A DNA stretch of 64,000 nt from IMGVR_UViG_3300007770_001284:1-64000, one strand, 5' to 3'. Numbered from the stretch's first letter, positions 2,679 to 49,700 are shown. A program made the numbers and translations. The notes: generated by a model not told the origin, from the letters alone.

Positions 2679-3470
2679 ATGCATAAAAGAGAAATAATAC
2701 ACATACACATTCCAAAAACAGGCGGTACTTGGTTGAATGAGACCCTAGCAGCTGTTATTCCAGATTATTTTTCGTTTGGTGAGCGTGATCATGTAGCAGT
2801 TGGTGCGCAATTGGAAGGGATTAAGTCATGGAGACGTACGGCACAACAGGTTGTTGATGATATACCGTGTACGTTGGTTGTGGCGCCTACAGGACCAGCC
2901 AAATATCCGCAACGATATCTTTCGGCTACCAAAATCAGCGTGTGTCGAAATCCTTACGATCTTCTTGTCAGCTATTATTGCCATGACTGGGATTGTGCTG
3001 GTGCTCCAGCTAGTGCCGACCTTGGTGATCATCCTATGGGTTGGGACAATATCAATGCGATTCATGGGATTCGTGATTTTGATGGCTTCATAAAAAGATA
3101 TTGCGATCCGGATTTTAAGTGGCATCATGTGCACCGACAACGACACCTGTTTTACCAGATGTACGACGCATCGGGTAGCTGTGGTATCGATATTATCATG
3201 CGGAATGAACGATTGCACGAAGCAATAAGCACATTTTTAGTATCAATGGATTATTGCACTGTTGATGAGATGAAAGTACATGATAGGCGAGTAAATACAT
3301 CTCCGGGAAAGACCCGAGATTATCGTAGTTATTATACTGATGAATTGATGGATCTTGTGACAGAGAAGTGCGCAAAAGAATTGCGAGATTATGCTTACGA
3401 TTTCGACGGCCCTACCGATGCCGACGCATTTCTTGAGAACAGTCGTGAATTGTATTACGATTTTGCCTGA
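2679..3470 (+). CDS. sulfotransferase family 2 protein
   Basis: IHIHIPKTGGT, VCRNPYDLLVSYY, C-terminal YRSYYTDEL...YDF. Confidence 0.85.
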   Translation: MHKREIIHIHIPKTGGTWLNETLAAVIPDYFSFGERDHVAVGAQLEGIKSWRRTAQQVVDDIPCTLVVAPTGPAKYPQRYLSATKISVCRNPYDLLVSYYCHDWDCAGAPASADLGDHPMGWDNINAIHGIRDFDGFIKRYCDPDFKWHHVHRQRHLFYQMYDASGSCGIDIIMRNERLHEAISTFLVSMDYCTVDEMKVHDRRVNTSPGKTRDYRSYYTDELMDLVTEKCAKELRDYAYDFDGPTDADAFLENSRELYYDFA

Positions 3471-3480
3471 TGTTGATGGT

Positions 3481-3526
3481 GGCTAATAACAGAAATCCCT
3501 AAAGGAAGAGAGCAATGCAGAAGAAG
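3481..3526 (+). repeat. 46-bp direct repeat, copy 1 (GGCTAATAACAGAAATCCCTAAAGGAAGAGAGCAATGCAGAAGAAG)
   Basis: matches 4669..4714 with 1 mismatch; includes the SD and the first codons MQKK. Confidence 0.9.
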
Positions 3527-4690
3527 TCAACCCGCAAGAAAACCTCTGAAAAGATTATCCACATACACCAATCAAAGACCGGTGGCACTTGGTTGAACAC
3601 GATACTACCGAAGTATCTAAAAAACGATTATATTGCTATGCCAACCGCATACAATATAGCATCGCAGGTCTGGAAGTATGGAGACGCTGGAGCTCGTTTA
3701 AACCTCTCCCGGAAACATCTTAACGATATCTATCACAGCCCTGAATTTCATGATGTAACAAAAGTCAGTATTTGTAGGAATCCATTCGATTATCTTGTAA
3801 GTCGATATCATCAAGATGGCTTCCAGGGCACGTTTCACCCATTAGAAAAATATAGCATCCCCGGGGTACCAGCTGGAATGGATTGTGCTAACGTAGTTCA
3901 TAAAATAGGTTCTTTTGACGAGTATATCAAAAAATACTGCGACCCGGACTTTCCCTTTGTGGACCCGGATACTAGAACGTTTTTCTTTCATACGATGTTT
4001 CAAGTAGACGGATCGTGCGGTGTCGACATAATAATAAGAAATGAGATGCTTAATTCTGCTGTTGGAAAGATTGTGAGTCTACACTCTCGTTTTCGGGGTA
4101 AAGAGGAGGAGGTAAGACAGGAGATTTTACAAGAATCTATCATCAATGCTTCACCCGCGCGCGAGAAGAAAGATTACAGATCATATTACACTGATGAGTT
4201 ACGTGAATTGGTCGAAAAAAAATGTGATGCTGAACTGATGTTATTTGAATATGACTTCGATGGACCGATTAATGATTATGAGTTTATTAATCCAGACGGA
4301 TTATTCTATCATGTCATGACTTTAACAGCGATGAAAAATGTTAACCCTACAATGAAATCAGATATCCAAGAGGGTATCGTGCGCGCAATGGACATGATTT
4401 TCAACGGCCCTGACGGAATTGATCAGGAGGGATTAAAGATGCTAATGGCAGCTCATCACCATATCACACCAAATGTATTTCTTCCATACGATTCGAACAC
4501 TCTTGTATGGAATGTGGGAAATGATTGGAATGACAATCCAATCTGGAAGATGCTGCCCTCTCAAGTGAGAGTAAGCGGGGTTGGCCTTAAACGATGGGGA
4601 GTGACTGACGAAGAGATAGCACAAGCAAAGGCGAGTAACAACGGCGATGTGCTAGCCCTGCTCCGCGCGGCTAAAAACAGAAATCCCTAA
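3515..4690 (+). CDS. sulfotransferase family 2 protein with C-terminal extension; paralog of 2679..3470
   Basis: IHIHQSKTGGTWLN, ICRNPFDYLVS, KKYCDPDF, GSCGVDIIIRNE and YRSYYTDEL shared with the upstream gene. Confidence 0.85.
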   Translation: MQKKSTRKKTSEKIIHIHQSKTGGTWLNTILPKYLKNDYIAMPTAYNIASQVWKYGDAGARLNLSRKHLNDIYHSPEFHDVTKVSICRNPFDYLVSRYHQDGFQGTFHPLEKYSIPGVPAGMDCANVVHKIGSFDEYIKKYCDPDFPFVDPDTRTFFFHTMFQVDGSCGVDIIIRNEMLNSAVGKIVSLHSRFRGKEEEVRQEILQESIINASPAREKKDYRSYYTDELRELVEKKCDAELMLFEYDFDGPINDYEFINPDGLFYHVMTLTAMKNVNPTMKSDIQEGIVRAMDMIFNGPDGIDQEGLKMLMAAHHHITPNVFLPYDSNTLVWNVGNDWNDNPIWKMLPSQVRVSGVGLKRWGVTDEEIAQAKASNNGDVLALLRAAKNRNP

Positions 4691-4714
4691 AGGAAGAGAG
4701 CAATGCAGAAGAAG
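4669..4714 (+). repeat. 46-bp direct repeat, copy 2
   Basis: see 3481..3526. Confidence 0.9.
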
Positions 4715-4918
4715 CCAGTAAAGAGGAAGAAGAGAGTCAAAGAAAGAGACATGCAGTGGGAAGTAAGAGAGGTAGGAGAGAGAGGCTACGGTGTCTTCCT
4801 CATGGACGAGTACTGCGCTACAGACGAGCCTGTGTGCTATGGTGTCAGTTACTCCAAAGACACTGCCGACAATCGATGTGACCGTCTCAACAACCCGCTG
4901 CACAGAGAAGATATATGA
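4703..4918 (+). CDS. hypothetical protein
   Basis: 71-aa ORF with SD AAGGA; start lies inside repeat copy 2. Confidence 0.7.
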   Translation: MQKKPVKRKKRVKERDMQWEVREVGERGYGVFLMDEYCATDEPVCYGVSYSKDTADNRCDRLNNPLHREDI

Positions 4919-5682
4919 GTCATTATTTAAAATACGCAAAGAATCGATTCTCCCAGAACGGTGAAGACGGTATCCTAGACCAGCTGTTCAAGGACTTGCA
5001 TATCGAGGCAGGTATCGTTGTTGAGTTCGGCGCCTGGGATGGTGTGTATCTTAGTAACACTTACCTGTTATGGAGGTACAAGGACTTCGACGCGGTACTG
5101 ATAGAAAGCGATCTGTGTAAAGCGACAGAACTAGTCTCCGTGACAAGAGGTTTCGATAACGTGGAGGCTGTATACGCTGCGGTGTCTCCTGTTAAAGACC
5201 ACAAGAATTCGCTCGACAATATGTTGGATCGTTCTGCCTTTGATGTTACGGAAGACTCGCTTGCGTTGGTCTCTAGTGATATCGACGGATCCGATTATGG
5301 CATATTCGAGTCTATGGAACGGCATCTTCCAAAAGTTGCTCTTATCGAGACATCCACCGGACCAGATCCACATTCTGGTAATTTGAGACAACTGACCGAT
5401 CTAGCGGAAGCAAAAGGATATACGCTAGTATGTCATACTGGTAATGCGGTCTACGTAAGGAACGATCTTATGCATCATCTAGACCATATAGACTTCGTAT
5501 ACGAAGATATGTGTTGTACTGAAGACGATGTAACTGCGCTACAAAATATCGGCTCTGAGGGTAAGAGTCGAATACCCACAATATACCGTCCTACCCGTGC
5601 GACGACGACTACGTACTTGAATTCTGTTACTAAAGAGATAGCGGCATGCAAGGCCCTCTCTGAGTCGGTGACAGGTGGCTAA
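4915..5682 (+). CDS. FkbM-like SAM-dependent methyltransferase
   Basis: SQNGEDGIL, VVEFGAWDG..LSNT, DIDGSDY, LVCHTGNAVY. Confidence 0.75.
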   Translation: MSHYLKYAKNRFSQNGEDGILDQLFKDLHIEAGIVVEFGAWDGVYLSNTYLLWRYKDFDAVLIESDLCKATELVSVTRGFDNVEAVYAAVSPVKDHKNSLDNMLDRSAFDVTEDSLALVSSDIDGSDYGIFESMERHLPKVALIETSTGPDPHSGNLRQLTDLAEAKGYTLVCHTGNAVYVRNDLMHHLDHIDFVYEDMCCTEDDVTALQNIGSEGKSRIPTIYRPTRATTTTYLNSVTKEIAACKALSESVTGG

Positions 5683-5797
5683 ACGACCATATGTCTTGGG
5701 TCGACAGGGGTAGTTTTTGCACTAGTGCCCTCGGTCGCTCTCCACGTGGAGTATAAAAAAAAGGGAGAATTGAAATCTCTCCTTAGCCCCCGTACGG

Positions 5798-5972
5798 GTG
5801 AGACATTTTTTTGTCTCACTTTTGTATCACATTCTGTAACATTTTTATGTATCATTTGTTACGGTGTTACATTTTTTTGTAACACTATTCCGTAACATTT
5901 ATGTCTCACTTCGGTGGATCTCTCACGCTCAACTCCTCTCAAGTATATTATTGTAACATTACACGTCTCACT
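5798..5972. repeat. iterated TGWNWCA/GTAACA motifs and GTGAGACA-T6-TGTCTCAC inverted repeat in a non-coding region
   Basis: GTAACA at 5836, 5879, 5892, 5953; TGTTAC at 5857, 5865; GTATCA at 5824, 5849; GTCTCACT at 5813, 5903, 5965. Confidence 0.85.
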
Positions 5973-6054
5973 GTTCACGACTGTTTTCCACGAGAGCGTA
6001 CGCTGAGTCTACCCGGCGCGGGGGCGGAAGTGAAAAAAAAGTTTTAACATTATC

Positions 6055-6083
6055 ATGAACAACATCGGCTAACCTCTTATTAT
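6055..6083 (+). promoter_or_regulatory. sigma70-type promoter for 6139..6363
   Basis: ATGAAC-N17-TATTAT; followed by a 5' hairpin GTTGGGGA/TCCTCAAC. Confidence 0.55.
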
Positions 6084-6138
6084 TGGACCACGTTGGGGAT
6101 GGCTCCTCAACATTAACCATGAAGGATGGAAAAAATAA

Positions 6139-6363
6139 ATGCCGTATAGCAAGAATCAGTCCACCAAGCGCTTTAGTTTTGGTATCACACGTAACTCCAC
6201 CAGCAAGAAGGCTGGCGCGAATGTCGTAACAATCGCAACCAACGCGGACGACAGTATGTACTACTCGACCCCCACCACGCAGCTCTCAATGACTGTCAAG
6301 GAAGCCCGAGTACTTCAGAGTTTCCTCAACGAGACTCTCGAGAGTGATATCAGCGTAGGGTAA
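6139..6363 (+). CDS. 74-aa monocistronic hypothetical protein
   Basis: ORF between its own promoter and a strong terminator. Confidence 0.8.
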   Translation: MPYSKNQSTKRFSFGITRNSTSKKAGANVVTIATNADDSMYYSTPTTQLSMTVKEARVLQSFLNETLESDISVG

Positions 6364-6382
6364 TTTTTTACCGACGTGATTT

Positions 6383-6413
6383 AAAGCCGGGGATTTTTCC
6401 CCGGCTTTTTTTT
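6383..6413 (+). terminator. Rho-independent terminator
   Basis: AAAGCCGGGGA-TTTT-TCCCCGGCTTT followed by a T run. Confidence 0.9.
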
Positions 6414-6440
6414 GAACAAAAGGCCGAGCGCTCTTACTAT
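6412..6440 (+). promoter_or_regulatory. sigma70-type promoter for candidate ncRNA
   Basis: TTGAAC-N17-TACTAT; predicted +1 at G6447 coincides with the start of the closing stem. Confidence 0.65.
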
Positions 6441-6446
6441 TGAATT

Positions 6447-6660
6447 GGATCAGGGAGAGGTAAGAAGATGCCGTAGAAACTCGGGGAATGTGGAAGCGGA
6501 AAAAGTCAGCGCGTTGGGGGGACGCAAGGGTGATGTCATCGCCGTGTTTGGGAATGGTGGAACGTCGGCGAAAGCGGTGACGCAAACGAACCGTCAGACC
6601 GCAACATCGCCCGGGTGGTCGGGTCCGAGTTCCGACCACCCACTCCCCCTTCCCTGGTCC
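6447..6660 (+). ncRNA. candidate novel structured ncRNA (~214 nt)
   Basis: closing stem 6447-6456/6651-6660; stems 6528-36/6604-12, 6539-44/6566-71, 6574-78/6598-6602, 6613-22/6632-41. Confidence 0.65.
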
Positions 6661-6691
6661 GATTTACGGAGGAAAATATTTTGCACAGCGC

Positions 6692-6720
6692 GTGCAAAAC
6701 TAGTGGTAATGTGGTACAAT
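6692..6720 (+). promoter_or_regulatory. conserved early promoter, copy 1
   Basis: GTGCAA-N17-TACAAT with extended -10 TG; same motif at 8606, 10068, 13323. Confidence 0.85.
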
Positions 6721-6765
6721 ATAATTGAATGGAGGGATTGGTTCCCCCACTAACTTAGGAAGTAT

Positions 6766-7581
6766 ATGAGACTCCGTGACTACAAAGCCCTCCTCGTATC
6801 AGACCGCAAAGCGGCGATGCTATTCGATCTAACTGAGCGCCACCCACGCGGACCAGAAGCTAAGCTCCGCGCACGTGACTACGAGCCACACGAGGGTTAT
6901 TACAATAACGTCGGTGCTGTGCTGGTGCTGAAAGAGTCTTCAATCCCGGCGACAGCTGAAGGATCACCCGCTACCGGGGGATGGGACCCTCGCGAGATTT
7001 ACGAAATCGAATCCGGCGAGTGGGAGCTTAAGCGACTCCTCGAGCGTATCGAAGTACCTGAGGATGTCGGTCGTGGGTCAACTTGGGGAGTCCAAGATGG
7101 CAATCGGAAGCTGTTCCCCGGGGGAGGATCGGCACTGACTCGTAGGTCCCGCCGCGCTAGCGGACGTATCTACCAAGCGAAGCGGTGGGTCAAGGAAAAT
7201 ATCAAGACTGCTATCTACAGCGTCTCCCTCGGCTACGGCACTGAGGTCCACGTCCACGGTGACAGTGACGAACAAGCGTTCATGCAGTACGAAATGTTCC
7301 TCAAGGGTGGAGTGGCCGGAATCCCGGACGCTCGTAAAGGGTACGACAATCAAGCTCGCTACGTTAAGCCGGCCGATAGTCCGACCGCGCTGATGACTCT
7401 CAACTCGAAGTTCGTCAATGACATGGACAGTCAGGTTGCTGCTAGCCTGGCTAACATTGAAAAGCTGAAGAAGGAAGTGGAAGCGATGAAGGCCGCTAGG
7501 GAGTTGGTGTACAGCTACTCGGTCAACATGGCAGCTACCTACGGTATCGATGATGATGAAGATGACGAGGCGGCAGCATAA
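6766..7581 (+). CDS. hypothetical early protein with C-terminal coiled coil and acidic tail
   Basis: 271-aa ORF with SD AGGAAG; first gene after the promoter at 6692. Confidence 0.85.
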   Translation: MRLRDYKALLVSDRKAAMLFDLTERHPRGPEAKLRARDYEPHEGYYNNVGAVLVLKESSIPATAEGSPATGGWDPREIYEIESGEWELKRLLERIEVPEDVGRGSTWGVQDGNRKLFPGGGSALTRRSRRASGRIYQAKRWVKENIKTAIYSVSLGYGTEVHVHGDSDEQAFMQYEMFLKGGVAGIPDARKGYDNQARYVKPADSPTALMTLNSKFVNDMDSQVAASLANIEKLKKEVEAMKAARELVYSYSVNMAATYGIDDDEDDEAAA

Positions 7582-7844
7582 TGGAAGAAGAACGTACACT
7601 CGGTCCACCTCAGATCCACGTCGGACTGTTCGCTCAAGCACATGAATTCGTGGATGAGTTGTGCGCCGGTATTGTCTATGGCGCGGCAGTCCAAGAGCTG
7701 GCCACACAGCAAGTCAGGATAACCACTGCGCTGGCTGAGACGAAATCTTTGGACGATCCAGGCGTGCAAGAATTGGCGGAGATTGACATGGAGATGGAAT
7801 TGAAGTGGCAACTTGCGTCTGAATTGTTTGGTATCGAGGCTTAA
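7581..7844 (+). CDS. hypothetical protein
   Basis: 87 aa; TAATG-coupled to the upstream gene. Confidence 0.75.
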   Translation: MEEERTLGPPQIHVGLFAQAHEFVDELCAGIVYGAAVQELATQQVRITTALAETKSLDDPGVQELAEIDMEMELKWQLASELFGIEA

Positions 7845-7882
7845 CTAACACCATATTTAATAAGGAATGGAGGTAATGTCGA

Positions 7883-8170
7883 ATGGCAGATAATCTCGCA
7901 GTCTTTCACACTCTCTCGAAAACGTTGGATAATACTGAACTACGTGCAGCAATCAATATTCTGATTCGTGAGCGTAAATCCCGTGATGAGAGAAAGTCCA
8001 ATGATAATAGGTACTTGCTTAAGGTCGGTGACCGCGTTGAGTGGAACGGTCGAGCTGGGAATGCTACCGGTACTGTAACGAAGGTCAAGCGTAAGAAGGC
8101 TCTCGTCACGGAAGATATAATGAAGAGTCGGTGGGATATCCCGCTTAGCATGCTTACAAAGGTTTCATAG
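7883..8170 (+). CDS. hypothetical protein with C-terminal SH3/KOW-like domain
   Basis: LKVGDRVEW...GTVTKVKRKKALV...WDIPLSML; SD GGAGG. Confidence 0.8.
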   Translation: MADNLAVFHTLSKTLDNTELRAAINILIRERKSRDERKSNDNRYLLKVGDRVEWNGRAGNATGTVTKVKRKKALVTEDIMKSRWDIPLSMLTKVS

Positions 8171-8178
8171 GAGTCATC

Positions 8179-8352
8179 ATGGTTTGGACAGTCATATACA
8201 GCGAGGCGACCGTCAGCTATTCGATCACAATCACGACATGTGGCAACGATTACAACGAAGCGTTGCTAGAAGCAGAACGCCGCAAGCCACTTCACAGTAG
8301 TGTCTTCGCCATCCTAAAGGGAAGTCACACAGATACAGTCCGGTTCTACTAA
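8179..8352 (+). CDS. 57-aa hypothetical protein
   Basis: SD AGGAG; MVWTVIYSEATVSY...; below the track length cutoff. Confidence 0.65.
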   Translation: MVWTVIYSEATVSYSITITTCGNDYNEALLEAERRKPLHSSVFAILKGSHTDTVRFY

Positions 8353-8362
8353 GGAGGATACC

Positions 8363-8578
8363 GTGTCAGTAGCAGCAGAGAAGACTAGTCAAGAAAGTAG
8401 ATCGTATAGGAATTACGATTACATCAGCACGTCGTATTGCGACATGTGCAGGGTTCGAACCAGTGTCGTCAACATCGTGGCAACTGGTAGGAAAGTATGT
8501 GGCCGCTGCGATGAGGAACACTATCTCATCGTCGGTGAGCTGGAGAAGAACAGGTGGATGAGGACGGGGAGGCGGTGA
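8363..8578 (+). CDS. small zinc-ribbon protein
   Basis: CDMC...CGRC; SD AAGGAGG; GTG start. Confidence 0.7.
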   Translation: MSVAAEKTSQESRSYRNYDYISTSYCDMCRVRTSVVNIVATGRKVCGRCDEEHYLIVGELEKNRWMRTGRR

Positions 8579-8605
8579 AATAAAGTGAATTTTATTTGCA
8601 GCTTC

Positions 8606-8634
8606 GTGCAATTCTTCCCATAATATGGTACAAT
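8606..8634 (+). promoter_or_regulatory. conserved early promoter, copy 2
   Basis: GTGCAA-N17-TACAAT, then ATAAATGAAGG. Confidence 0.85.
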
Positions 8635-8700
8635 ATAAATGAAGGTGGGGAAAGGAAGAGGTCCTTCTCCCCCCAAATAGTCACCCACTAAGGACAAATC

Positions 8701-9789
8701 ATGGACGTCAAAACTCTCAAAACATGTATCGCAGCCCTTCCACCCAATATCGCTGCGCTAATGCGCGGTCCCACCGGTGTCGGTAAGTCACACGTAGCCA
8801 AGGATGTCGCAGATGTCCTCGGGCTCCCATTCCTCGATGTCCGCGGAAGCACCATGGACGAGGCTAAGGTCGGCGGAATCCCGGATTTCGAGACCTCAAA
8901 GGAACGTGGGGTGTCCACCTTCTGTCCTCCCTCTTGGTTCAAGCGCGCTTGCGATGAGCCAGTTCTCCTGATGCTCGATGAGCTCAACCGCTCGATGCCG
9001 CAGGTACAGCAGGCCTTCTTTCAGATTGTCCTGGACCGAGAGCTCGGTAACGACGCTGACGGTGTACCTCTGAGGCTCCACCCCGGAACGCGTATCATCG
9101 CGGCAGTTAACTGCGGTAACGAATACGATGTCAACGACATGGATCCCGCCCTCTTGCGGCGCTTCTGGGTCTGTGACCTCGAGCCTACCGTAGCCGACTG
9201 GATTGAGTGGGCAACCGAAGCCGGTCTCGATAAGGTCCTGGTGGAGTTCATCCAGCAGAACCCCGAGCACTGGAGAGTCGACCCCGCCGATGTGGAATCT
9301 GGAACGGTCGTTCCTACTCCCGCCTCCTGGCACCGTCTCAGCGACACTCTGGTCTCGGCCGGATTGGAGCCTGCAAAGATGGCTGGATTCGAGGTTAGCT
9401 CGACTACCTACCCTCTGACCATGGGCTTCGTAGGTACGGAAGCTGCGATCTCCTTCGTTGACTTCCTCAAGAACTACGAACGTAACATTACCGCAGAGGA
9501 TGTCCTGGCCGGTAAGGTCACGGCAGAAGATGTCAAGGAGCTCCCCGCTTCTCAGAAGACTGCCCTCATCGACAAGATCAGCACTCACGCTGCTGAGAAC
9601 AAGTGGAAGAAGGCAGAGGTCAAGAGGATCGCGGCGTTCGCAACCGAACTCGGTGGTGAGTTCCTGATTGCAACCTTCACGGCAGTGCAGAGAGCCAACA
9701 ACATGGCGAACCTGCTCCCCCTCAACAAGTTGATTGGAATGGAAGTAGTCTCCCTGGTCAACGATGCACGGGCAGTGTCGAAGGACTAA
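8701..9789 (+). CDS. MoxR-like / AAA_5 family AAA+ ATPase
   Basis: Walker A GPTGVGKS, Walker B LMLDELNR, sensor IAAVN, MDPALLRRF. Confidence 0.9.
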   Translation: MDVKTLKTCIAALPPNIAALMRGPTGVGKSHVAKDVADVLGLPFLDVRGSTMDEAKVGGIPDFETSKERGVSTFCPPSWFKRACDEPVLLMLDELNRSMPQVQQAFFQIVLDRELGNDADGVPLRLHPGTRIIAAVNCGNEYDVNDMDPALLRRFWVCDLEPTVADWIEWATEAGLDKVLVEFIQQNPEHWRVDPADVESGTVVPTPASWHRLSDTLVSAGLEPAKMAGFEVSSTTYPLTMGFVGTEAAISFVDFLKNYERNITAEDVLAGKVTAEDVKELPASQKTALIDKISTHAAENKWKKAEVKRIAAFATELGGEFLIATFTAVQRANNMANLLPLNKLIGMEVVSLVNDARAVSKD

Positions 9790-9806
9790 AGGGGAATGAC
9801 GTCCCC

Positions 9807-9844
9807 GGTGTCGGGGGGTGGGTGACCCCCCGGCGCCATCTTTT
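9807..9844 (+). terminator. GC-rich hairpin terminator
   Basis: GGTGTCGGGGGG/CCCCCCGGCGCC 12-bp stem followed by ATCTTTT. Confidence 0.65.
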
Positions 9845-9860
9845 ATCACCCAGGAAAGAT

Positions 9861-10055
9861 ATGACGAATCAACCCACAGATACTGAAGTCATACAAGCTG
9901 TCCAACGATGGCTTATAGAAGCACGAGACTTCAGGAATGATGGGTATGTCCAGCACGGGTATAAAGAGAAATTGCTAGCGGTGCATGCCACCACAACAGC
10001 AGCTCTACAAACGCTGGGATTGATCACTAATATTTCCTCAGAAAAGAGTAATTAA
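9861..10055 (+). CDS. hypothetical protein
   Basis: ATG at 9861 with AGGAAAG SD; trimmed from track ORF 9822. Confidence 0.7.
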   Translation: MTNQPTDTEVIQAVQRWLIEARDFRNDGYVQHGYKEKLLAVHATTTAALQTLGLITNISSEKSN

Positions 10056-10067
10056 ATCTAACACTTC

Positions 10068-10096
10068 GTGCAATTGTGCTCAACATGTGGTACAAT
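10068..10096 (+). promoter_or_regulatory. conserved early promoter, copy 3
   Basis: GTGCAA-N17-TACAAT, then ATAATTGAAGG. Confidence 0.85.
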
Positions 10097-10118
10097 ATAA
10101 TTGAAGGTAGGAATGGAT

Positions 10119-11537
10119 ATGGCCGCTAAATCAAATACCCCAGAAGCTGGACGCGACATCGGCACGGTAACCCACGCTGATAAGGCAACTGCCGCCGCAT
10201 TCACTCTTAAGCCACACATCGTAGCGATGATGCTCGAAGAGCCCTTCTACGGAAAGGTCCTTCGGAAGGTCTCGAAGATTCGCACCGAGCAGGTCTCAAC
10301 CGCCGGTGTTCTCTGCCAAGATGGTGATCTTAAGCTCTGGTGGAACCCACGGTTCATGGCTGGTCTCCGGGCCAAGCACGTACGTGGAGTCATGAAGCAC
10401 GAAATGCTCCACCTGGTCTTCGAGCACACCACAACTCGTAAGTTCACTCCTCACATCATCTGGAACTACGCTACCGACCTGGCTATCAACAGCCACCTGG
10501 CCGATGAGCTCCCCGAGTTCTGTCTCCTCCCAGGTCGCGGGTTCAAGGCCCTCACCGCGGAAGATAAGGAAAAAATGGGAGAGGAAGCCGTCCGTCGGTA
10601 TGAACTGGTCTCCGCTAAGATCGAATCCTTCCCGCTGCACATGGCAGGGGAATGGTACTTCGCACGGTTGATGGAAGACAAGGACGTCGCTGACTCCATC
10701 CAGGATCCTAACCCCGATAAGAACGATTGTGAAGGTGATGGTGGCGGCGAAGGTCAGCCTGGAGAGGGTCAGCCCGGTCAGGGTGGTGGTCCCGGAAACG
10801 GAACTCCTCAGATGCCCGGTACTCTCGATGACCACGGTGGGTGGGGAGAGATGACGGACGAAGAGCGTGAGTTCGTGAAGGCCAAGATCAAGCAGGCCGC
10901 CGGCGATGCTGCTCGGGAGTGTGATGCTAAGGGTGGCTGGGGTAACGTCCCCGCGGAACTTCGGAAGAAGATTCGGGAAGCCCTCATCAGTGAACTTCCC
11001 TGGCAGAAGGTGCTGGATCGGTTCCTCGGCTACAGCCGTCGGGCCAACCGGTCTACCAGCTGGTCGACCATCCACTCCGCTTACGGTCCCATCACTCCTG
11101 GCGCGAAGCGAGGGTACACTTCTTCGGTAGCCACCTACATCGATCAGAGTGGGTCGGTTGGAGATGAGGAGCTTACGCTGCTCTTCGGTGAGTTGTCCGG
11201 TCTGGCTAAGAAGACTGAGTTCACTTGCTTCCACTTTGACACTGAGATTGATGAGGCCTCCAAGACAGTCTGGAAGAAGGGTCGGACACAGCCGCCGCAC
11301 CGGACTCGGGGTGGAGGTACTTGCTTCATCGCTCCTTCCAAGCACGCAAACGATCGGCGGAAGGAGTTCGACGGTTACGTCATCCTGACGGATGGTTACG
11401 CTAGCGACCCCGGTCCCAGCAAGTTGCCCCGGGCATGGATCATCACCCCTGACGGTGCAGTCCAAGACTGGATGAACAAGTACAAGAAGGACACCATCAT
11501 CCACATGAAGTGGCCGGCCAGCAGGGTCGCCGCTTAA
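10119..11537 (+). CDS. DUF2201-type protein: metallopeptidase-like N-domain, Gly-rich linker, vWA-like C-domain
   Basis: KHEMLHLVFEH (HExxH), WNYATDLAIN, DDHGGW, IDQSGSV (MIDAS), GGGTCF, ILTDGY. Confidence 0.88.
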   Translation: MAAKSNTPEAGRDIGTVTHADKATAAAFTLKPHIVAMMLEEPFYGKVLRKVSKIRTEQVSTAGVLCQDGDLKLWWNPRFMAGLRAKHVRGVMKHEMLHLVFEHTTTRKFTPHIIWNYATDLAINSHLADELPEFCLLPGRGFKALTAEDKEKMGEEAVRRYELVSAKIESFPLHMAGEWYFARLMEDKDVADSIQDPNPDKNDCEGDGGGEGQPGEGQPGQGGGPGNGTPQMPGTLDDHGGWGEMTDEEREFVKAKIKQAAGDAARECDAKGGWGNVPAELRKKIREALISELPWQKVLDRFLGYSRRANRSTSWSTIHSAYGPITPGAKRGYTSSVATYIDQSGSVGDEELTLLFGELSGLAKKTEFTCFHFDTEIDEASKTVWKKGRTQPPHRTRGGGTCFIAPSKHANDRRKEFDGYVILTDGYASDPGPSKLPRAWIITPDGAVQDWMNKYKKDTIIHMKWPASRVAA

Positions 11538-11551
11538 AATCAGGAGACTAC

Positions 11552-11728
11552 ATGTCTACCACGGAAGTCGAGTTCATTATGCTACAGCTGGCGGCTTTTA
11601 GCTTCGTCTGCTTTTCAATCGCCTTTGGAATCATTGGTGTGATGCTCAAGCGTAAGGCCAATGGAGAGATCCGGCCGCGGGTCAAGCGTCATCCTAACGG
11701 TCGTGTCATTCGAAACGCACGCGGCTAA
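11552..11728 (+). CDS. small membrane protein
   Basis: SD AGGAG; one hydrophobic segment followed by a basic tail. Confidence 0.7.
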   Translation: MSTTEVEFIMLQLAAFSFVCFSIAFGIIGVMLKRKANGEIRPRVKRHPNGRVIRNARG

Positions 11729-11773
11729 AAACAAAAACATCTAAAGAGCTAATAACTCCAATAGGAGAAGTGA

Positions 11774-12067
11774 ATGCAACATCGTAAGAAGGTAGAGTGT
11801 GCAGACGGATTCACGGTCTCGGTACAGGGTCACGAGGGTGCGTACTGTTCTCCCAGGAACGATGTCGGTCCCTACGAGTCTGTCGAGTGCGGGTTCCCAA
11901 GTCACTACGATATCCACCTGCAACCCTACGCCGAGGACCCGAGCCGACCGACCGAGACGGTCTACGGTTGGGTCCCGGCCGTCGTGGTCCAGCTCTGTAT
12001 CGACTCCCACGGCGGCATGGTCGCCGGGGAGTTGCCACCCTTTGTCCAGGGATACAAATCCGTGTAA
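11774..12067 (+). CDS. conserved phage hypothetical protein
   Basis: CADGFTVSVQ...YCSPR...VECGFPS...VYGWVP pattern; SD AGGAG. Confidence 0.8.
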   Translation: MQHRKKVECADGFTVSVQGHEGAYCSPRNDVGPYESVECGFPSHYDIHLQPYAEDPSRPTETVYGWVPAVVVQLCIDSHGGMVAGELPPFVQGYKSV

Positions 12068-12345
12068 CAAATAACAGATACATGTAACACCGTAACATTT
12101 ATGTTACACATGGGGTGAACCAAGGGGCCGTAACATTAATGTTTCACCCCCCATACGAGGCCCCTATTTCAAGGCCCATAGGGGCCTACCTCAAGGGCCC
12201 CAAAATTGGCCCCATCTGAGCCCCAAATTTAGGCCCCTCTGTACTCACCCAGAGGCCACTGGTAGGGGTTGCCTTAGGCGAGGGAAATTTTTTTTTCGAG
12301 CTAATTTGAAAACCAAAAGCTAATTTCACACAAAAAATTCTCGAA
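12063..12345. repeat. second GTAACA iteron cluster, followed by phased GGCCCC repeats and A/T tracts
   Basis: TGTAACA at 12063, 12083; CCGTAACATTTATGT at 12090; CCGTAACATTAATGT at 12128; GGCC(CC) at 12126, 12159, 12173, 12183, 12196, 12208, 12232, 12254; GCTAATTT twice. Confidence 0.85.
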
Positions 12346-12561
12346 GCAAATTCTAAAACAGCACCGGTATCATGAAACATCAACTACACCCAAGAGAAAT
12401 AAAAGCTCGCACTCTCATGATATTGATCTCCATAGGGCTAGCACTCATCGTGCATTACTTCGCCAATGAGGCGCATGATATCCCACCACAGTCAGATTGT
12501 GAGTGTATGTGCCCAGACCACCGTGAACACGACACCACCGACCGTTAAAATAAGGAATACC

Positions 12562-12996: not shown

Positions 12997-13124
12997 ACGC
13001 CGGAAGGTGTATCATTTCGAAGCGCGAAGATCCTATCCCGATCAATCACTTAGCTGGGCCGATACACCTAAGCGGCGATATCATCTATTTTTATCCTAAC
13101 AGTGATTGGGAAACTACTGGTGTC

Positions 13125-38244: not shown

Positions 38245-40179
38245 ATGTCAAAGAATAAGAGCAAATATCTTGATATCATTACTAGTCAAAGAAAAAAGAA
38301 GTCTTCTGAAAAGTTTGAGGGAAGTTTGCTTGACTATTTTGCACTCTTAGAAAAGAATCCATCGTTAGCTGACCGCGCGCATAAGAGGCTTTACGATGTT
38401 ATAACGTCACACGGGGTCTCAGTACTTGAAGACGAAGACCCACGAAAGTACAAGCTTTTTGATGGTGACAATGTTAAGATTTATGATTATTTCGCTGATG
38501 AATTTTTTGGAATGGAAAATGTTATTTCAAAAATCTTAAGATACCTGAGGTCTGCTGCGCATAATGGTGAAGAGTCCAGACAGGTGTTATTATTAATGGG
38601 TCCAGTTGGTGCCGGGAAATCTGCTTTAACAGAGCATATCAAAGCTTCGCTTGAAAGTGTAAAATATTATCACCTAAAAGACGATCCGCAGAGAGGCGAT
38701 CCACTACAGCTAGTTCCGCGATCGCTACGGAAACGTTTCAGCAAGATGCTTAACGTTTCAATTGAGGGAGATATTTCTCCTGTTGCCAGGTTCTTATTGT
38801 TCGAAAAGTACGAGGGGTCTTACGAAGAATTTGAAGTTGTTGAAACAACATTCTCTCAACGTGCTCGTCGGGGGATCGCAACAGTACCGCCAATGGATGC
38901 AAACAGCCAAGATGTTTCAGTGTTAATTGGGTCAGAAGACATTTCGAAGCTAGACAAATATTCTGAAGATGACCCCCGGGCGCTATCCCTAAATGGTGCG
39001 TTTAACGTCGGTAACAGAGGGCTGGTCGAACTTGTGGAGGTCTTTAAGAACGAAATTGAGTTTCTCCATACTATCATTACTGCAACACAGGAGAAGAGGA
39101 TTCCTTCCCCCGGAAAGCATGACATGCTACACTTCGACGGTGTTATTCTTGCTCATTGTAATGAAGCCGAATGGAACCGGTTTCAAAGCGAACATACAAA
39201 CGAGGCAATATTAGATAGAATTGTTAAAGTTGAAGTACCGTATGTTCTAGAGCTAGCGCAAGAAATGAAGATATATCAAAAAATTCTTGATCGTTCCCAT
39301 TTTTCTTCTCATATCGCGCCTCATACACTTCGTGTGGCGTCAATGTTTTCTATTCTTAGTCGGCTCCATGCTAGCCAAAAGTGCGATCTTCTTACGAAGC
39401 TTAAGATTTATAACGGCGAAGATGTTGTTGAAAAGGGTCGTGTCAAAAAAATTGATATTAAAGACCTAAGAGACGAAGCTCCGCATGAGGGAATGCAGGG
39501 TATTTCAACGCGCTTTATAATGAAGGCTATCGATAATGCTTTGAGCGATTCTGATAAAGATTTTATTACTCCTGTTTCTATTCTTGACTCATTAGTGAAG
39601 CAGGTCAAAGAGCAACTTACTGATTTTGATTTTCAAAACCACTGTCTAGATCTGCTCAGAAATACCGTACGTGACGAGTATCTTCGTATGCTGGAAAACG
39701 AAATTGCAAAAGCGTTTATAACAGCATACGAAGAACAAGCACAGGCTATTTTCGAAAATTACCTCGACAATGCCGAAGCCTTCACAACTCACTCTAAAAT
39801 GAAAGACAAAGTAACAAAGGAAGAGCGCACCCCTGACGAAGAATTTATGAAAGCAATTGAGGGAGCGATCGGGGTGAGCAATTCTGGAAGAGAGGGCTTC
39901 AGGGCTGACGTTACCGCATATATGTTTTCAAAAATGAGACGTGGCGAAGTTGTAGACTATACATCTTATGAACCGTTAAAAGACGCAATCGAAACATATC
40001 TCATCACATCTGTGAAAGATCTGGCACGAATTGTTACAAAATCAAAAACAAGAGATGACGACCAAAAACAAAAGTACTCAAGCATGGTACAAACGCTGAT
40101 CGACGAATATGGTTATACAGCTGCGTCCGCGGAAGAGATCTTGGTGTTCGCCAGCAATAACTTATGGAGAGATAGCTAA
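38245..40179 (+). CDS. prkA: PrkA/YeaG AAA+ serine protein kinase
   Basis: FFGME, LMGPVGAGKS, GNRGLVELVEVFK, NEAILDR, GISTRF. Confidence 0.93.
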   Translation: MSKNKSKYLDIITSQRKKKSSEKFEGSLLDYFALLEKNPSLADRAHKRLYDVITSHGVSVLEDEDPRKYKLFDGDNVKIYDYFADEFFGMENVISKILRYLRSAAHNGEESRQVLLLMGPVGAGKSALTEHIKASLESVKYYHLKDDPQRGDPLQLVPRSLRKRFSKMLNVSIEGDISPVARFLLFEKYEGSYEEFEVVETTFSQRARRGIATVPPMDANSQDVSVLIGSEDISKLDKYSEDDPRALSLNGAFNVGNRGLVELVEVFKNEIEFLHTIITATQEKRIPSPGKHDMLHFDGVILAHCNEAEWNRFQSEHTNEAILDRIVKVEVPYVLELAQEMKIYQKILDRSHFSSHIAPHTLRVASMFSILSRLHASQKCDLLTKLKIYNGEDVVEKGRVKKIDIKDLRDEAPHEGMQGISTRFIMKAIDNALSDSDKDFITPVSILDSLVKQVKEQLTDFDFQNHCLDLLRNTVRDEYLRMLENEIAKAFITAYEEQAQAIFENYLDNAEAFTTHSKMKDKVTKEERTPDEEFMKAIEGAIGVSNSGREGFRADVTAYMFSKMRRGEVVDYTSYEPLKDAIETYLITSVKDLARIVTKSKTRDDDQKQKYSSMVQTLIDEYGYTAASAEEILVFASNNLWRDS

Positions 40180-46724: not shown

Positions 46725-49700
46725 ATGGCAAAAGACTTTCGCACAAATCAGATTAGAACCTCAACGATCATCGGTTCCGGATCGCTCAGCACAGCAACAC
46801 CATCAGGTCATCAGGTTGGGTTAGTAATATGTAGCGGCTCGGGCGCATCGGATTTCGATGGAGGATATGTAGACCCCAATATACTCAAGTTCGTAGGCGA
46901 TGATGTCTGGATGGTCGTTAGTGGTACAGCTGACCATACTTCGTATATGGCAGAACAAAAACCTGCTGGTGGGTCTGTCTTGTTCCTGGGTGACGTCGTA
47001 GTTAGCGGAACGCTGTGGGCTGAAAGAAGCGTCATCGAAGTTGACAACCAAGTTATCGGTGACATGATGGTACCGAACGCGTTGGTGGCCGGCACCGAAC
47101 CTGAGGATCTAGCGGGTGGGGTAGCAGCCAAACTTCTTGTCGATCCGTTCACAACGAACGCAGGAGGAACTGGAACGCAGGATGGTACAGTATCGTTCAA
47201 TATCGTTACAGCGCCCGGCGCTGGTGTCGCTTGGAGATACGACGGCACATTAAAGACAGACGTTTTCTTCCACGTTTCAGGTAGCCGTGACGTAAGGAAT
47301 ACTAACAATAGGGGTCTTGCACTGTTCGACGGTGACGTGCACGTCTCAGGTAACTTCAGTGTCGATGAAGGCGGTACCTTCACCACAGACATTATTCTCG
47401 ATAACGATACGACCGCCCCTCCTGTCATAAAGCATGCTAAGGATTACGGCGGCAGTGGTGAGGTGGTCTATAGCGAGTACGCGATTAGAAACGTGGACTC
47501 CGGTCCGAGCTGGTGGCATCTCGACATTGTACACTCTGGAGCGAATGCTTCTCCCAGCGGCATAGACTCTGGCATAAGACTGAAGGTAAACGACGGTGCT
47601 ACAGATCTTGCAGATCGATCGGCATTCGTTGTATCAGCATCAGGTGATATTGCCATTGACCCAGGGAAAGAGATAAGGTTCGCTGGCAGAAGCGGCGGGT
47701 ATGGACCACATATCGAATATAATGTGCCAGATAGTTCCTCACCGACCAATTACGCCAATGGGCAACTTGCCTTTAAGCATTATTATTCATCACTTGACAC
47801 CCCAACATCATTCAACTTTACGGGTGGTGTAGTAACAGCGTCGAATGGAATTTACTTACCTGATGCGGATACATTTGGAGGTGATTATATCGCCTCGGCC
47901 CGAGGGCAAACTCGGGGAATTATGTTCGCGGGTAGCTCTGGAGACGACGGTGATGGAGTCGGCCCAGGCGATGCAGGGATATATTACAACGAAGATAACC
48001 TAGTAAATGAAGTCTTGGGCGGAACTTATAACACTCTGTGCATGGTCGCGTCGAATACCGGCTCCAACATCCATATCGAAGCTGGAAATTATTTAACCTT
48101 ACGTGCCGGAACGCGCGCTGAGCCGGGTGATATCGAGATCAGTGGTTCGAATGACATGTGGCTCAGGGCCCTCGGGTCACTTAGGGCAGATGTTGAAACA
48201 AATATACTCATGGTTCCGCAAGGTTACACAACTTTTGCGGGGGATCTTGCCGCTGTTCCTACCCCACAAGGTGACGTCAAGTTCTTTGTTTCAGGTGCGG
48301 TTGGTGGAAAACATGGGGGATCAAGAAGCATAGCGCTATTCGGTGGGGACCTTGTCACGAGTGGAGTCCTTTATGTTGATGGTACCACAGGCGACGGCGG
48401 CGCTCCTGTTTACGGTGGTTCTGCTCTGGTCCTGCGTGGGGGTATTACATGGGATATGAGCGGATCGACGGATCCCGATGGAGATTCCTGGATATGGGAA
48501 AATAGTGACGATCTCTTTGTGAAGGGGAGAGACCACCTCTATCTTCATGCTTCAGGTACTGCTGGTTCTGGTACCGTAACAGTGTCTGGATCGGTTGCTG
48601 ATGTCTATGCCGCGGCGGGTAGTGCTACGGTAAGCGGTTCTAATCAAGTTATCCTCCTCGCTGGTAATGATGTACTCTCTACAGCGGCCGATGACCATGT
48701 GTTCATAAGCGGTGAAACGGCATTCTTTGCAGGTGACGACAAGTCGGTTCCTGTCGCTGCTAGCGATGTTCACTTCTTAGTCTCTGGCTCGCTAAATACA
48801 AGACATACCTCAACGAGGGGTACAGCATTATTCACCGGTGATCTTGTCACGAGTGGAGTCCTTTATGCTGACGGTGCTATCACTGATGGTGGCGCACCTG
48901 GATATGGTGGATCCAGTTTGGTCCTCCGTAACGGAATCGCATGGGATGTATCGGGTTCTGCTGGAGACAATGGTCAAGCCTGGTTGTGGGAATTTGGCGA
49001 TGTTCTTTACTTGAAGGGCAAAGATGGTGTAACTCTCCACGCATCTGGTACAGACGGTTCTGGAACAGCAAATATAAGCGGATCAATTGTCAATGTTTAT
49101 GCAGGCGCAGGGAGTGCTACTTTAAGCTCATCTCTAGATACCTTCATCAAGTCTGGCGATGATATTGTACTGTCGGCATCTGACAAGATCTTCATGTATC
49201 CCGAAGGCGGAAAGATCTACGCGGCAGAGAATACAGCTGTTGGCTACAATCAGTGCACAATTGATTTAACAGTTCCTGCCTTCCAACTGAGAGCCTCAGA
49301 CTCAGATTATTTCCAGATTGATGTGGGCGCTGATGGTAGCACCATATTCACTACGGTGGATGGAGACGCCAATGCGGCGAACTTGACCATGAACGTCGAT
49401 GGTGCCGTTGACATAAACGCAGTGAGTAATGTGACACTTGACGTTTCGGCCGGCCCTATCTCAATCGGAACTACTGCAGTTGCGCAACAAATAACAATCG
49501 GTGGAGACACCAGCACCCGGACCGAGATTGAGCTGAACGCGATAGCTATAGACGTTAATGCCGGAAGCGGCGGTGTAGACATCGGAGCGGGTGGTGACAT
49601 AACGTTAAGCGGCTCCGGCGATCTGGAGCTAATCGGAACCACCGGCGTTACGATTCGGGGTGATGTATCACTAACAGACAACCTAACTGTATTTGGTGAT

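What the first reader, a model, noticed from the sequence alone, without database searches (positions are those of the whole stretch)
5683..12560. Twin iteron regions bracket a ~6-kb GC-richer early block: terminal repeat, first-step-transfer or origin signal
Seen: two non-coding regions (5683-6138 and 12068-12560) carry many copies of a quasi-palindromic TGWNWCA/GTAACA motif. They share the exact 15-mer CCGTAACATTTATGT (5890 and 12090) and a 1-mismatch copy at 12128. Between them lie three conserved early promoters and genes with visibly C-ending codons (by eye; GC not computed). Known: T5 injects its terminal region first, and an injection-stop signal made of repeats and palindromes bounds it. 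Inference: these are protein-binding arrays marking genome ends, a staged-injection boundary, or replication origins.
Basis: partly seen in the sequence, partly recalled or inferred. Interest (0 to 1): 0.7.

Follow-up and report, generated by a model that had tools for sequence, protein, structure and literature searches.

The report
Twin protein-binding repeat arrays, jumbo phage
Two unique non-coding stretches packed with evenly spaced short repeats sit at the two ends of the first-expressed gene block of an uncultured marine giant phage and its many relatives; they look like docking sites for DNA-binding proteins (most likely a replication origin with a helper site), not like genome ends.

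Summary
TGTNWCAY octamers cluster only at 5798-5971 and 12062-12147 in the 255-kb contig, and the 15-mer, the early promoters and the C-ending codons all check out. About 80 metagenomic relatives (AAA ATPase 68-97% identical) keep the same layout: array 1, a conserved immediate-early module, then array 2, with the arrays 5.4-6.2 kb apart. Sites are phased at about 12 bp and the motif changes between lineages.

Array 2 is followed in nearly all relatives by 6-10 GGCCCC/GGGGCC units at 12-13-bp spacing, invariant boxes and T9/A8 tracts. This locus is single-copy in the window's genome and in a near-complete relative.

The genome-end readings are not supported:
- The terminase is T4 gp17-like.
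- A 281-kb relative closes on itself across region 1.
- No end repeats are recorded.
- The roughly 2x depth block (4685-10690) has branch points and edges that differ between samples, which fits a strain mixture.

RNA-structure tests were negative. No Rep_3, ParB or integrase gene was found.

Best guess, at modest confidence: cis-acting nucleoprotein assembly sites, meaning a replication origin plus an auxiliary site. The main rival is regulation or insulation of the early gene block. Function is unproven.

The parts
5737..5752 (.). Palindrome CTCTCCACGTGGAG at the left edge of region 1; kept in relatives as TCCACG(T/A)GGA
   Evidence: Read. TCCACGTGGA occurs only twice in the genome.
5756..5782 (-). 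A8 run plus hairpin. Read on the minus strand it is a hairpin followed by T8, a terminator-like signal for leftward transcripts.
   Evidence: Terminator scan. The hairpin is kept, with changed stem extensions, in L059, L070 and L071. It is absent in the G001/L076 lineage.
5781..5796 (.). Conserved box CCTTAGCCCCCGTACG
   Evidence: Single copy in the genome at up to 3 mismatches; kept in relatives.
5798..5909 (.). Array 1: ten octamer sites (TGTNWCAY or its complement) spaced 9-14 bp apart, several paired as 7-bp inverted repeats with T6 spacers
   Evidence: The same kind of array sits at the same place in relatives.
5950..5977 (-). Leftward promoter-like site: -35 TGAACA, 16 nt, extended -10 TGTTACAAT. 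It is built on an array octamer and points into array 1. Two further octamers lie at 5952 and 5964.
   Evidence: Promoter scan. TG(N)TACAAT is kept in L053, L058 and L059. Transcription was not tested.
5984..6041 (.). Conserved box TTTTCCACGAGAGC ... GGCGGAAGTG followed by A8, upstream of the p74 promoter
   Evidence: Unique in the genome. Kept in all relatives read.
6056..6083 (+). Sigma-70-type promoter of the small early gene (TGAACA, 16 nt, TATTAT)
   Evidence: TGAACA-N17-TATAAT is found in relatives.
6139..6363 (+). p74, the first gene of the module. It has its own promoter and a strong terminator (6383-6408). The model is a four-strand, one-helix domain.
   Evidence: Found in 36 loci at 50-95% identity. 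AlphaFold2 model pLDDT 70. Weak matches to PUR/Whirly folds and to WGR/SAS-6 folds. Terminator.
6688..6735 (+). Early promoter 1 (CGTGCAA ... TGGTACAATATAA)
8602..8649 (+). Early promoter 2
10064..10111 (+). Early promoter 3
6766..12067 (+). Conserved immediate-early module between the arrays: p271, small ORFs, MoxR-type AAA ATPase (8701-9789), DUF2201 metallopeptidase/VWA protein (10113-11537) and p97 (11774-12067)
   Evidence: Pfam and PHROGs hits. Synteny in relatives.
12062..12147 (.). Array 2: six octamer sites of the same family as array 1, including the shared 15-mer and a 24-nt inverted copy of 5857-5880
   Evidence: Octamers are present here in many relatives but not all.
12124..12237 (.). 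GGCCCC/GGGGCC iteron array (units at 12124, 12159, 12173, 12181, 12195, 12208, 12219 and 12232; the last four are 11-13 bp apart)
   Evidence: Only cluster in the genome. Present in 39 related loci at 12-13-bp spacing. Single locus in the 281-kb relative.
12240..12277 (.). Conserved boxes after the iterons: TACTCA... (TACTCAGTGGG in relatives, degenerate here) and TGCCTTAG (12270-12277)
   Evidence: Invariant columns in the alignments. Single copy in the genome.
12288..12359 (.). A/T-rich stretch: T9, then TTCGAGCTAATTTGAAAAC, an A-run and TTCTCGAAGCAAATTCTAAAAC (two related roughly 20-mers)
   Evidence: Conserved in all relatives. Each is unique in the genome. No conserved hairpin sits directly before the T-run.

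Best explanation
The two regions are single-copy, cis-acting DNA elements. They are phased arrays of short protein-binding sites at the two ends of the immediate-early gene module of an uncultured marine T4-superfamily jumbo phage.

Region 1:
- About 12 octamers (TGTNWCAY) spaced roughly 12 bp apart.
- They lie between a leftward terminator-like hairpin and a pair of divergent promoters.
- The rightward promoter drives p74.

Region 2:
- The same octamers, followed by a nearly universal array of GGCCCC/GGGGCC units every 12-13 bp.
- Then two invariant boxes and an A/T-rich stretch with T9 and A-runs.

The most likely mechanism is inferred, not shown. A sequence-specific protein coats both octamer arrays and may bridge them across the roughly 6-kb module. 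A second factor loads on the G/C iterons. The neighbouring A/T tracts then melt, helped by the strong early transcription that runs through the module. Region 2 would thus act as a replication origin, with region 1 as its auxiliary or control site.

Shown: the arrays are real, unique, phased, conserved in place, lineage-specific in sequence, and not supported as RNA structures or as genome ends. Inferred: protein binding, bridging and origin function.
For: - Uniqueness and enrichment.
- Phasing: octamers 11-13 bp apart, GGCCCC units 12-13 bp apart.
- Conservation: twin arrays 5.4-6.2 kb apart around a syntenic module in relatives whose AAA ATPase is only 68-72% identical.
- Lineage-specific motif: GTAACA, TGTAAAA/TTTACAA, GTGTATAGAGG and others. 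WIN, L075 and L077 show the same motif type in both arrays. This is typical of a site evolving together with its binder.
- The G/C iterons, invariant boxes and T9/A8 tracts are conserved at the sequence level in all relatives.
- No consensus RNA fold and no covariation, and no Rfam family, so the conservation is at the DNA level.
- Strong host-type promoters flank and cross the elements.
[quoted passage not shown] Paired short-iteron sites kilobases apart occur in P4 ori/crr and SPP1 oriL/oriR (my own knowledge, not checked here).
- Genome-end readings are disfavoured.
Against: - No recognisable initiator: Rep_3 is absent from G000 and from the 92%-complete G001.
- The module's proteins (MoxR-type ATPase, VWA/DUF2201 protein, p271, p97, p74) have no known replication role.
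- The DNA polymerase lies about 180 kb away.
- GC skew is positive over the whole contig with no switch.
- T4-type phages mostly start replication from R-loops and recombination, without iteron-binding initiators (PMC3016281).
- The octamer array is missing from region 2 in some lineages, such as L064, L065 and L082, so the 'twin' arrangement is not universal.
- The binding protein was not identified.
- Nothing here measures replication.
Confidence: 0.35

Rival explanations
1. Regulatory or insulator arrays. A phage or host DNA-binding protein coats both arrays to mark off the immediate-early transcription unit. It would control the divergent promoters of region 1 (autoregulation or early shut-off) and block read-through at region 2.
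For: - Region 1 holds two divergent promoter-like sites, and one array octamer forms the extended -10 of the leftward one.
- The arrays sit exactly at the start of the block that carries the family's host-type promoters and at the end of its last conserved operon.
- Relatives have a second promoter-like element directly abutting the GGCCCC array.
Against: - None of the three strong early promoters (6712, 8626, 10088) carries an octamer.
- The same promoter type and the same codon bias continue 3 kb past array 2.
- Operator arrays of 10 or more phased sites, joined to a second universal iteron class and A/T tracts, are more than a repressor needs.
Confidence: 0.25
2. Genes for small RNAs. A roughly 190-nt leftward RNA would be made from the 5958-5950 promoter to the 5782-5756 terminator, carrying the octamers as hairpins. 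A rightward GGCCCC-repeat RNA would end at the T9 run. Either could act as a protein sponge or regulator.
For: - A leftward promoter-like site and a minus-strand hairpin followed by T8 bracket array 1.
- That RNA folds far better than shuffles (z -4.3).
- Single sequences of region 2 form a hairpin around TACTCAGTGGG.
Against: - The order and orientation of the octamers are not conserved between relatives.
- The A8 run and leftward terminator are absent in the G001/L076 lineage.
- RNAalifold finds no consensus pairs.
- The proposed hairpin does no better than shuffles or slid partners.
- No Rfam match.
Confidence: 0.12
3. Packaging or entry signals. These would be a pac-type site for a ring-shaped small terminase (about 10 phased sites could wrap one ring), the boundaries of a long terminal repeat, or a T5-like injection stop.
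For: - Two conserved repeat regions a few kb apart among poorly conserved early genes recall T5 repeat regions 2 and 3 (bioRxiv 10.1101/866236).
- Many related contigs start within about 1.5 kb upstream of array 1.
- Ten to twelve sites at 12-bp spacing would fit one turn around an oligomeric ring (inference).
Against: - TerL is T4 gp17-like (E 5e-46), which by established knowledge of T4 goes with headful packaging of permuted DNA.
- G001 closes on itself across region 1 and L076 crosses the joint.
- IMG/VR records no end repeats for G000 or G001.
- The 2x depth block does not match the arrays and has branch points.
- The arrays have no DnaA boxes.
- The terminase gene is about 130 kb away.
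Confidence: 0.1
4. Centromere-like sites or a sponge for a host factor. The octamers resemble half of the chromosomal parS palindrome and the P1 parS box A heptamer, so host ParB or another host protein might be recruited or titrated.
For: - TGTTTCAC and TGTTACAC match a parS half-site as I recall it (TGTTNCAC; my own knowledge, not checked here).
- TCCACGTGGA at 5741 resembles the parS centre.
- Arrays of short sites in both orientations are typical of plasmid centromeres.
Against: - No full 16-bp parS palindrome is present.
- No ParB_N or HTH_ParB gene is found in G000 or G001.
- The phage looks lytic: T4-like, with no integrase.
- The motif differs between lineages although chromosomal parS is nearly universal.
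Confidence: 0.06

Closest known systems
Phage T4 oriE
   Same: T4-superfamily phage. [quoted passage not shown] The role of the repeats is itself undefined (PMC3016281).
   Different: T4 oriE lies inside gene 5 with repEA/repEB on the opposite strand. Here the repeats are non-coding, have a G/C hexamer core, are joined to a second array type, and occur with a partner array 6 kb away. Homologues of RepEA/RepEB were not searched for.
Satellite phage P4 ori / crr, and SPP1 oriL / oriR (from my own knowledge)
   Same: Two cis regions kilobases apart carry the same short sites in both orientations, bound by one initiator. P4 uses 8-bp sites, and an A/T-rich stretch lies beside them.
   Different: No P4 alpha-type or G38P-type initiator was identified here. 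The G/C iteron class has no counterpart.
T5 first-step-transfer region with its injection stop signal
   Same: Highly conserved non-coding repeat regions a few kb apart share repeats. They lie among poorly conserved early genes driven by strong host-type promoters (bioRxiv 10.1101/866236).
   Different: T5's regions lie in a 10-kb terminal repeat at a fixed genome end and carry paired DnaA boxes. Here there is no terminal repeat, the terminase is T4-type, a relative has a circular map, and there are no DnaA boxes.
Iteron plasmids and P1 (ori iterons - rep - control iterons)
   Same: Two arrays of the same sites flank a gene block; the sites are phased; an A/T-rich stretch is adjacent.
   Different: Plasmid iterons are 17-22 bp long and flank a Rep_3-type initiator gene. 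Here the sites are 6-8 bp at 12-bp spacing, the block is 6 kb, and no Rep_3 gene is found.

Membership tests
T5-type terminal repeat / first-step-transfer region | The block lies in a long direct terminal repeat (a second copy, or 2x depth with the same edges as the block) | tested here: not met
   - The block has no second copy in the contig.
- IMG/VR classes G000 and G001 as having no end repeats.
- The raised-depth block is 4685-10690 in runs X1 and X5, and extends to 12295 or 13036 in X3 and X4.
- Contigs break at its edges in all runs.
T5-type terminal repeat / first-step-transfer region | Fixed physical genome end next to the block | tested here: inconclusive
   Only assembled contigs were available, so read starts could not be examined. 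Indirect evidence points against a fixed end: the terminase is gp17-like and G001 closes on itself across region 1.
T5-type terminal repeat / first-step-transfer region | Paired DnaA boxes in the repeat regions | tested here: not met
   TTWTNCACA occurs at 3555, 6679 and 13173, and at no position inside either array.
Iteron-type origin with Rep_3 initiator (plasmids, P1, F) | Rep_3-family initiator gene beside the iterons | tested here: not met
   PF01051 gives no match in G000 or G001.
Iteron-type origin with Rep_3 initiator (plasmids, P1, F) | Tandem 17-22-bp iterons next to an A/T-rich unwinding stretch | tested here: inconclusive
   The units are 6-8 bp at 11-13-bp spacing, not 17-22 bp. 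An A/T-rich stretch with T9 and A-runs does follow the G/C iterons.
T4 oriE-like origin | [quoted passage not shown] | tested here: met
   GGCCCC units are 11-13 bp apart here and exactly 12 bp apart in L071. Early promoters lie at 10088 and 13343. Origin activity itself cannot be tested with these tools.
ParB/parS centromere | 16-bp parS palindrome and a ParB gene | tested here: not met
   Only half-site-like octamers are present. ParB_N and HTH_ParB are absent from G000, and ParB_N is absent from G001.
Phage attachment site (attP) | Integrase gene in the genome | tested here: not met
   PF00589 gives no match in G000 or G001. Serine recombinases were not searched.
Structured non-coding RNA | Conserved secondary structure with covariation, or an Rfam family | tested here: not met
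   - No Rfam match at E up to 1 in the regions.
- RNAalifold predicts 0 pairs.
- The named hairpin scores below shuffles and no better than partners slid towards the 3' end.
PUR / Whirly-like single-strand nucleic-acid binders (for p74) | Four strands plus one helix, with significant structural or profile similarity | tested here: inconclusive
   - The topology matches.
- Most of the top Foldseek hits are Pur-alpha, MRP1/2 and Whirly, but at E 0.01-0.1 and TM 0.38-0.50.
- VIA-align ranks SAS-6 N-domain and PARP2 WGR higher (Z 5-6.3) than PUR/Whirly (Z 4.1-4.5).
- No Pfam PurA hit.

The most novel reading that the evidence does not exclude
A widespread group of uncultured marine T4-superfamily jumbo phages may use a previously undescribed bipartite cis-element. 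It would combine lineage-specific 8-bp sites at both ends of the immediate-early module with a universal array of 12-nt G4C2-type iterons beside A/T tracts. This element would serve as their replication origin, or master switch, without any classical initiator. It would be served by module proteins of unknown fold (p271) or by the small early protein p74, which may bind the G-rich strand in the manner of PUR proteins.
Probability: 0.15. Interest if true: 0.7.

Novelty: new variant of a known kind. Interest (0 to 1): 0.5.

Why it matters
Origins and other cis-acting control sites are almost unknown for jumbo phages and for uncultured marine phages in general. Even in T4 the role of the oriE iterons is unresolved.

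Here a complex, single-copy element is conserved in dozens of environmental relatives. It has clear sub-parts: lineage-specific octamers, universal 12-nt G/C iterons, invariant boxes and A/T tracts. That gives a concrete, testable candidate for where replication, or early-to-later switching, is controlled in this lineage.

The element also provides a compact DNA signature for recognising members of the lineage in metagenomes. If it turns out to be only a regulatory boundary, it is still a clean example of a binding site and its binder evolving together across a phage family.

Tried and rejected
- **Terminal repeat, from depth.** Logan contigs of four runs show a roughly 2x block. Its edges (4685, and 10690, 12295 or 13036) do not match the arrays, differ between runs and are branch points. 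I read this as co-occurring strains.
- **Loose ends and joints.** Those at 6706/6735, 10085 and 12089 come from shared promoter or array words in related phages, not from rearrangements.
- **The 15-mer and the promoter 18-mer in viral contigs.** Apart from the window's own phage, the hits were unrelated DNA.
- **RNA readings.** Rfam, RNAalifold (twice) and a named-hairpin pair count were all negative.
- **General promoter class.** The boxes of region 2 are single-copy in the genome.
- **Octamers as variants of the -10 element.** The family's promoter does not vary with the octamer type.
- **DnaA boxes.** There are none in the arrays.
- **ParB, Rep_3 and tyrosine integrase genes.** None found.
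- **p271 as the specificity protein.** Its divergence (26-86% identity) is not coupled to the motif type, and its confident model has no PDB match.
- **p97.** No informative relatives.
- **p74 with G-rich single-stranded DNA in complex prediction.** The job was not folded and gives no evidence either way.
- **Arrays in distant relatives (AAA ATPase 36-48% identical).** The k-mer clusters there are in coding sequence; p74, p97 and the G/C iterons are all absent.
- **Vaiskunaite et al. 1999 on T4 oriE.** The paper is not held.

Full report
**Context**

- The window is the first 64 kb of a 254,743-base IMG/VR virus contig. The contig is classed 'linear' and estimated 75% complete, so position 1 is only a contig end.
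- It is a jumbo myovirus of the T4 superfamily. It has a T4-like major head protein, two sheath paralogues and a family-B polymerase. Its large terminase matches T4 gp17 at E 5e-46.
- It also carries a sigma-70-family gene, a tmRNA and five tRNAs.
- Nearly all genes lie on the + strand, and GC skew is positive throughout with no switch.
- The DNA is common in marine metagenomes.
- No cultured phage is close; the best head-protein matches are about 47% identical.

Yes.
- GTAACA/TGTTAC averages 0.17 per 300 nt but reaches 6 and 5 only at about 5.8 and 12.06 kb.
- Written as an oriented octamer, TGTNWCAY gives 10 sites in 5790-5975 and 6 in 12055-12150, against 0.11 and 0.06 expected.
- The 15-mer is found only at 5890 and 12090, with a one-mismatch copy at 12128. 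A 24-nt inverted copy also links 5857-5880 with 12074-12097.
- The three promoters share CGTGCAA-N14-TGTGGTACAATATAA.
- Third-position C is 0.35 in the block against 0.18 elsewhere.
- Two corrections apply. The compositional block and a fourth promoter (13343) extend about 3 kb beyond array 2. The small gene 6139-6363 has its own promoter and terminator.

**Anatomy of region 1 (5683-6138), read left to right**

- A palindrome containing TCCACGTGGA.
- An A8 run and a hairpin which, on the minus strand, read as hairpin plus T8.
- A conserved box, CCTTAGCCCCCGTACG.
- Ten octamers 9-14 bp apart, several forming 7-bp inverted repeats around T6.
- Two more octamers. One of them is the extended -10 (TGTTACAAT) of a leftward promoter-like site.
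- A conserved box ending in GGCGGAAGTG plus A8.
- A rightward promoter, then p74.

**Anatomy of region 2 (12068-12371)**

- Six octamers.
- Eight GGCCCC/GGGGCC-type units, the last four 11-13 bp apart.
- The boxes TACTCA... and TGCCTTAG.
- A T9 run and two related A/T-rich roughly 20-mers.
- Every one of these boxes is single-copy in the contig, and the G/C cluster is the only one.

**Relatives**

- A scan with the AAA ATPase found 244 metagenomic relatives. The best 80 were kept, at 68-97% identity.
- Wherever the contigs reach far enough, the order is the same: array 1, p74, p271, small ORFs, AAA ATPase, p77, VWA/DUF2201 protein, p97, array 2. The arrays are 5.4-6.2 kb apart, while the flanks differ.
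- The array motif changes by lineage: GTAACA/GAAACA, TGTAAAA/TTTACAA, GTGTATAGAGG and GTGTAA. Several lineages use the same type in both arrays.
- The G/C iterons, TACTCAGTGGG, TGCCTTAG, the T8-9 run and the CGGAGC...TTTGAAAAC boxes are kept almost everywhere. They form a single locus in the 281-kb relative G001.
- Some lineages lack octamers in region 2.
- More distant phages (AAA ATPase 36-48% identical) lack p74, p97 and both array types.

**Genome ends?**

- Only assembled contigs of the sequencing runs could be laid on the window, so read starts are unknown.
- Depth is about 1.5-2.4x higher from 4685 to 10690 in runs X1 and X5, and to 12295 or 13036 in X3 and X4.
- Contigs break at the edges in all runs, and extra 95-99% contigs overlap the block.
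- A collapsed terminal repeat gives no branch points and has fixed edges. This pattern instead fits strains that share a conserved core.
- The 92%-complete relative G001 ends and starts within region 1 with a roughly 26-nt overlap, and contig L076 crosses that joint. The map is therefore circular and region 1 is internal.
- Together with a gp17-like terminase, this makes fixed ends, a long terminal repeat and a defined first-entering segment unlikely, though not excluded.
- T5's injection stop signal is a fair formal parallel: two conserved repeat regions among variable early genes. However, its terminal repeat and DnaA boxes are not found here.

**RNA or DNA?**

- Rfam gives nothing.
- The leftward RNA of region 1 would fold well, but the order of the octamers is not conserved, and the terminator is missing in one lineage.
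- For region 2, RNAalifold finds no pairs in two alignments. A hairpin seen in single sequences scores below shuffles in the pair count.
- The conservation is therefore at the level of primary DNA sequence.

**Who binds?**

This is not resolved.
- p74 models as four strands and a helix. Its weak matches are to PUR/Whirly folds and, by another aligner, to WGR and SAS-6 N-domains, none above the level of a common arrangement.
- p271 has a confident model but no PDB match, and its divergence does not track the motif type.
- No Rep_3, ParB or tyrosine integrase gene is present in G000 or G001.
- The complex prediction was not run by the tool.

**Verdict**

- The arrays are real, conserved, phased protein-binding-type DNA elements that frame the immediate-early module.
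An origin is the best remaining guess at about 0.35. The reasons are uniqueness, two iteron classes at 12-bp phase, adjacent A/T tracts, strong early transcription, and the parallel with the 12-nt repeats of T4 oriE.
- Against it stand the lack of an initiator gene and of any replication measurement.
- Regulation or insulation of the early block is the main rival (0.25).
- RNA genes, packaging signals and centromere-like sites follow.

Noticed in passing
window 6139-6363: p74, a 74-aa first early gene with its own strong promoter (A8 upstream) and terminator, is kept in all close relatives. The model is four strands plus a helix, with weak likeness to nucleic-acid-binding PUR/Whirly and WGR folds. 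Its G-rich-strand binding is only a lead.
   Followed up: partly
window 3488-4705 (sulfotransferase-like paralogues 2679-3470 and 3515-4690): In all four runs the contigs are shattered here into pieces of 39-1209 nt at about half the depth of the neighbouring block. This is a strain-variable island of P-loop sulfotransferase-like genes just upstream of region 1.
   Followed up: partly
window 8701-9789 and 10113-11537: A MoxR-type AAA ATPase and a DUF2201 metallopeptidase/VWA protein form the conserved core of the early module. The same pair is found in N4-like phages (best tblastn hits about 28% identical). The VWA gene has a Gly/Pro/Glu-rich linker near 10.7-10.8 kb where the assemblies branch.
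   Followed up: partly
L099, L100, L113, L127, L126, L082, L116, L075 (for example L127:7059-7085): A second promoter-like element, AAAAAGCYAATNAAATCAACCACTTAG, occurs about three times per related locus, roughly 40-50 nt before start codons. One copy directly abuts the GGCCCC array. The window's phage lacks it (one weak copy at 13040).
   Followed up: partly
window 6678-6700 with 6688-6735: The early promoters are near-identical roughly 48-nt cassettes. At least the first overlaps a stem-loop, which recalls the mobile 'promoter-early stem-loop' cassettes described for T4-type phages (from my own knowledge).
   Followed up: no
G000 228165-228509 (minus strand); tRNAs at about 244.3, 245.4, 245.6, 249.3 and 254.6 kb: The phage carries a tmRNA (tag ANNNNHFEYALAA) and tRNAs Met, Lys(ttt), Asn(gtt), Arg(tct) and Leu(taa), which mostly read A/T-rich codons (Lys AAA, Arg AGA, Leu TTA). 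This fits C-ending codons in the early genes and A/T-ending codons in the rest of the genome.
   Followed up: partly
G000 220610-220813: A sigma-70-family gene (region 2 domain, E 1e-22). No phage RNA polymerase was found, so later genes may use host polymerase with a phage sigma factor.
   Followed up: no
window 38245-40179: A full-length PrkA-type AAA/serine protein kinase (Pfam E 3e-132). Among phages it is otherwise seen mainly in Thermus phages, a Ralstonia jumbo phage and uncultured megaphages.
   Followed up: no
window 46725-53171 and 53171-58606: Two adjacent giant ORFs (2148 and 1811 aa) without family matches, except a weak BclA C-terminal-domain hit at the end of the second.
   Followed up: no
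L149 (end of G001) and L075:1-60 (its start): The 281-kb relative's contig breaks inside its own region 1 at a unit that differs by three bases between its two ends. The assembly break lies in the repeat region, and the genome map is circular.
   Followed up: yes
window 12270-12277 and relatives; G000 about 249330: The invariant TGCCTTAGCTCG and TACTCAGTGGG boxes resemble the 5' acceptor/D-arm part of a tRNA (compare the phage's own tRNA-Arg, which begins GCCTCCTTAGCTCAGTGG). ARAGORN finds no tRNA here and no integrase is present, so this may be chance.
   Followed up: partly
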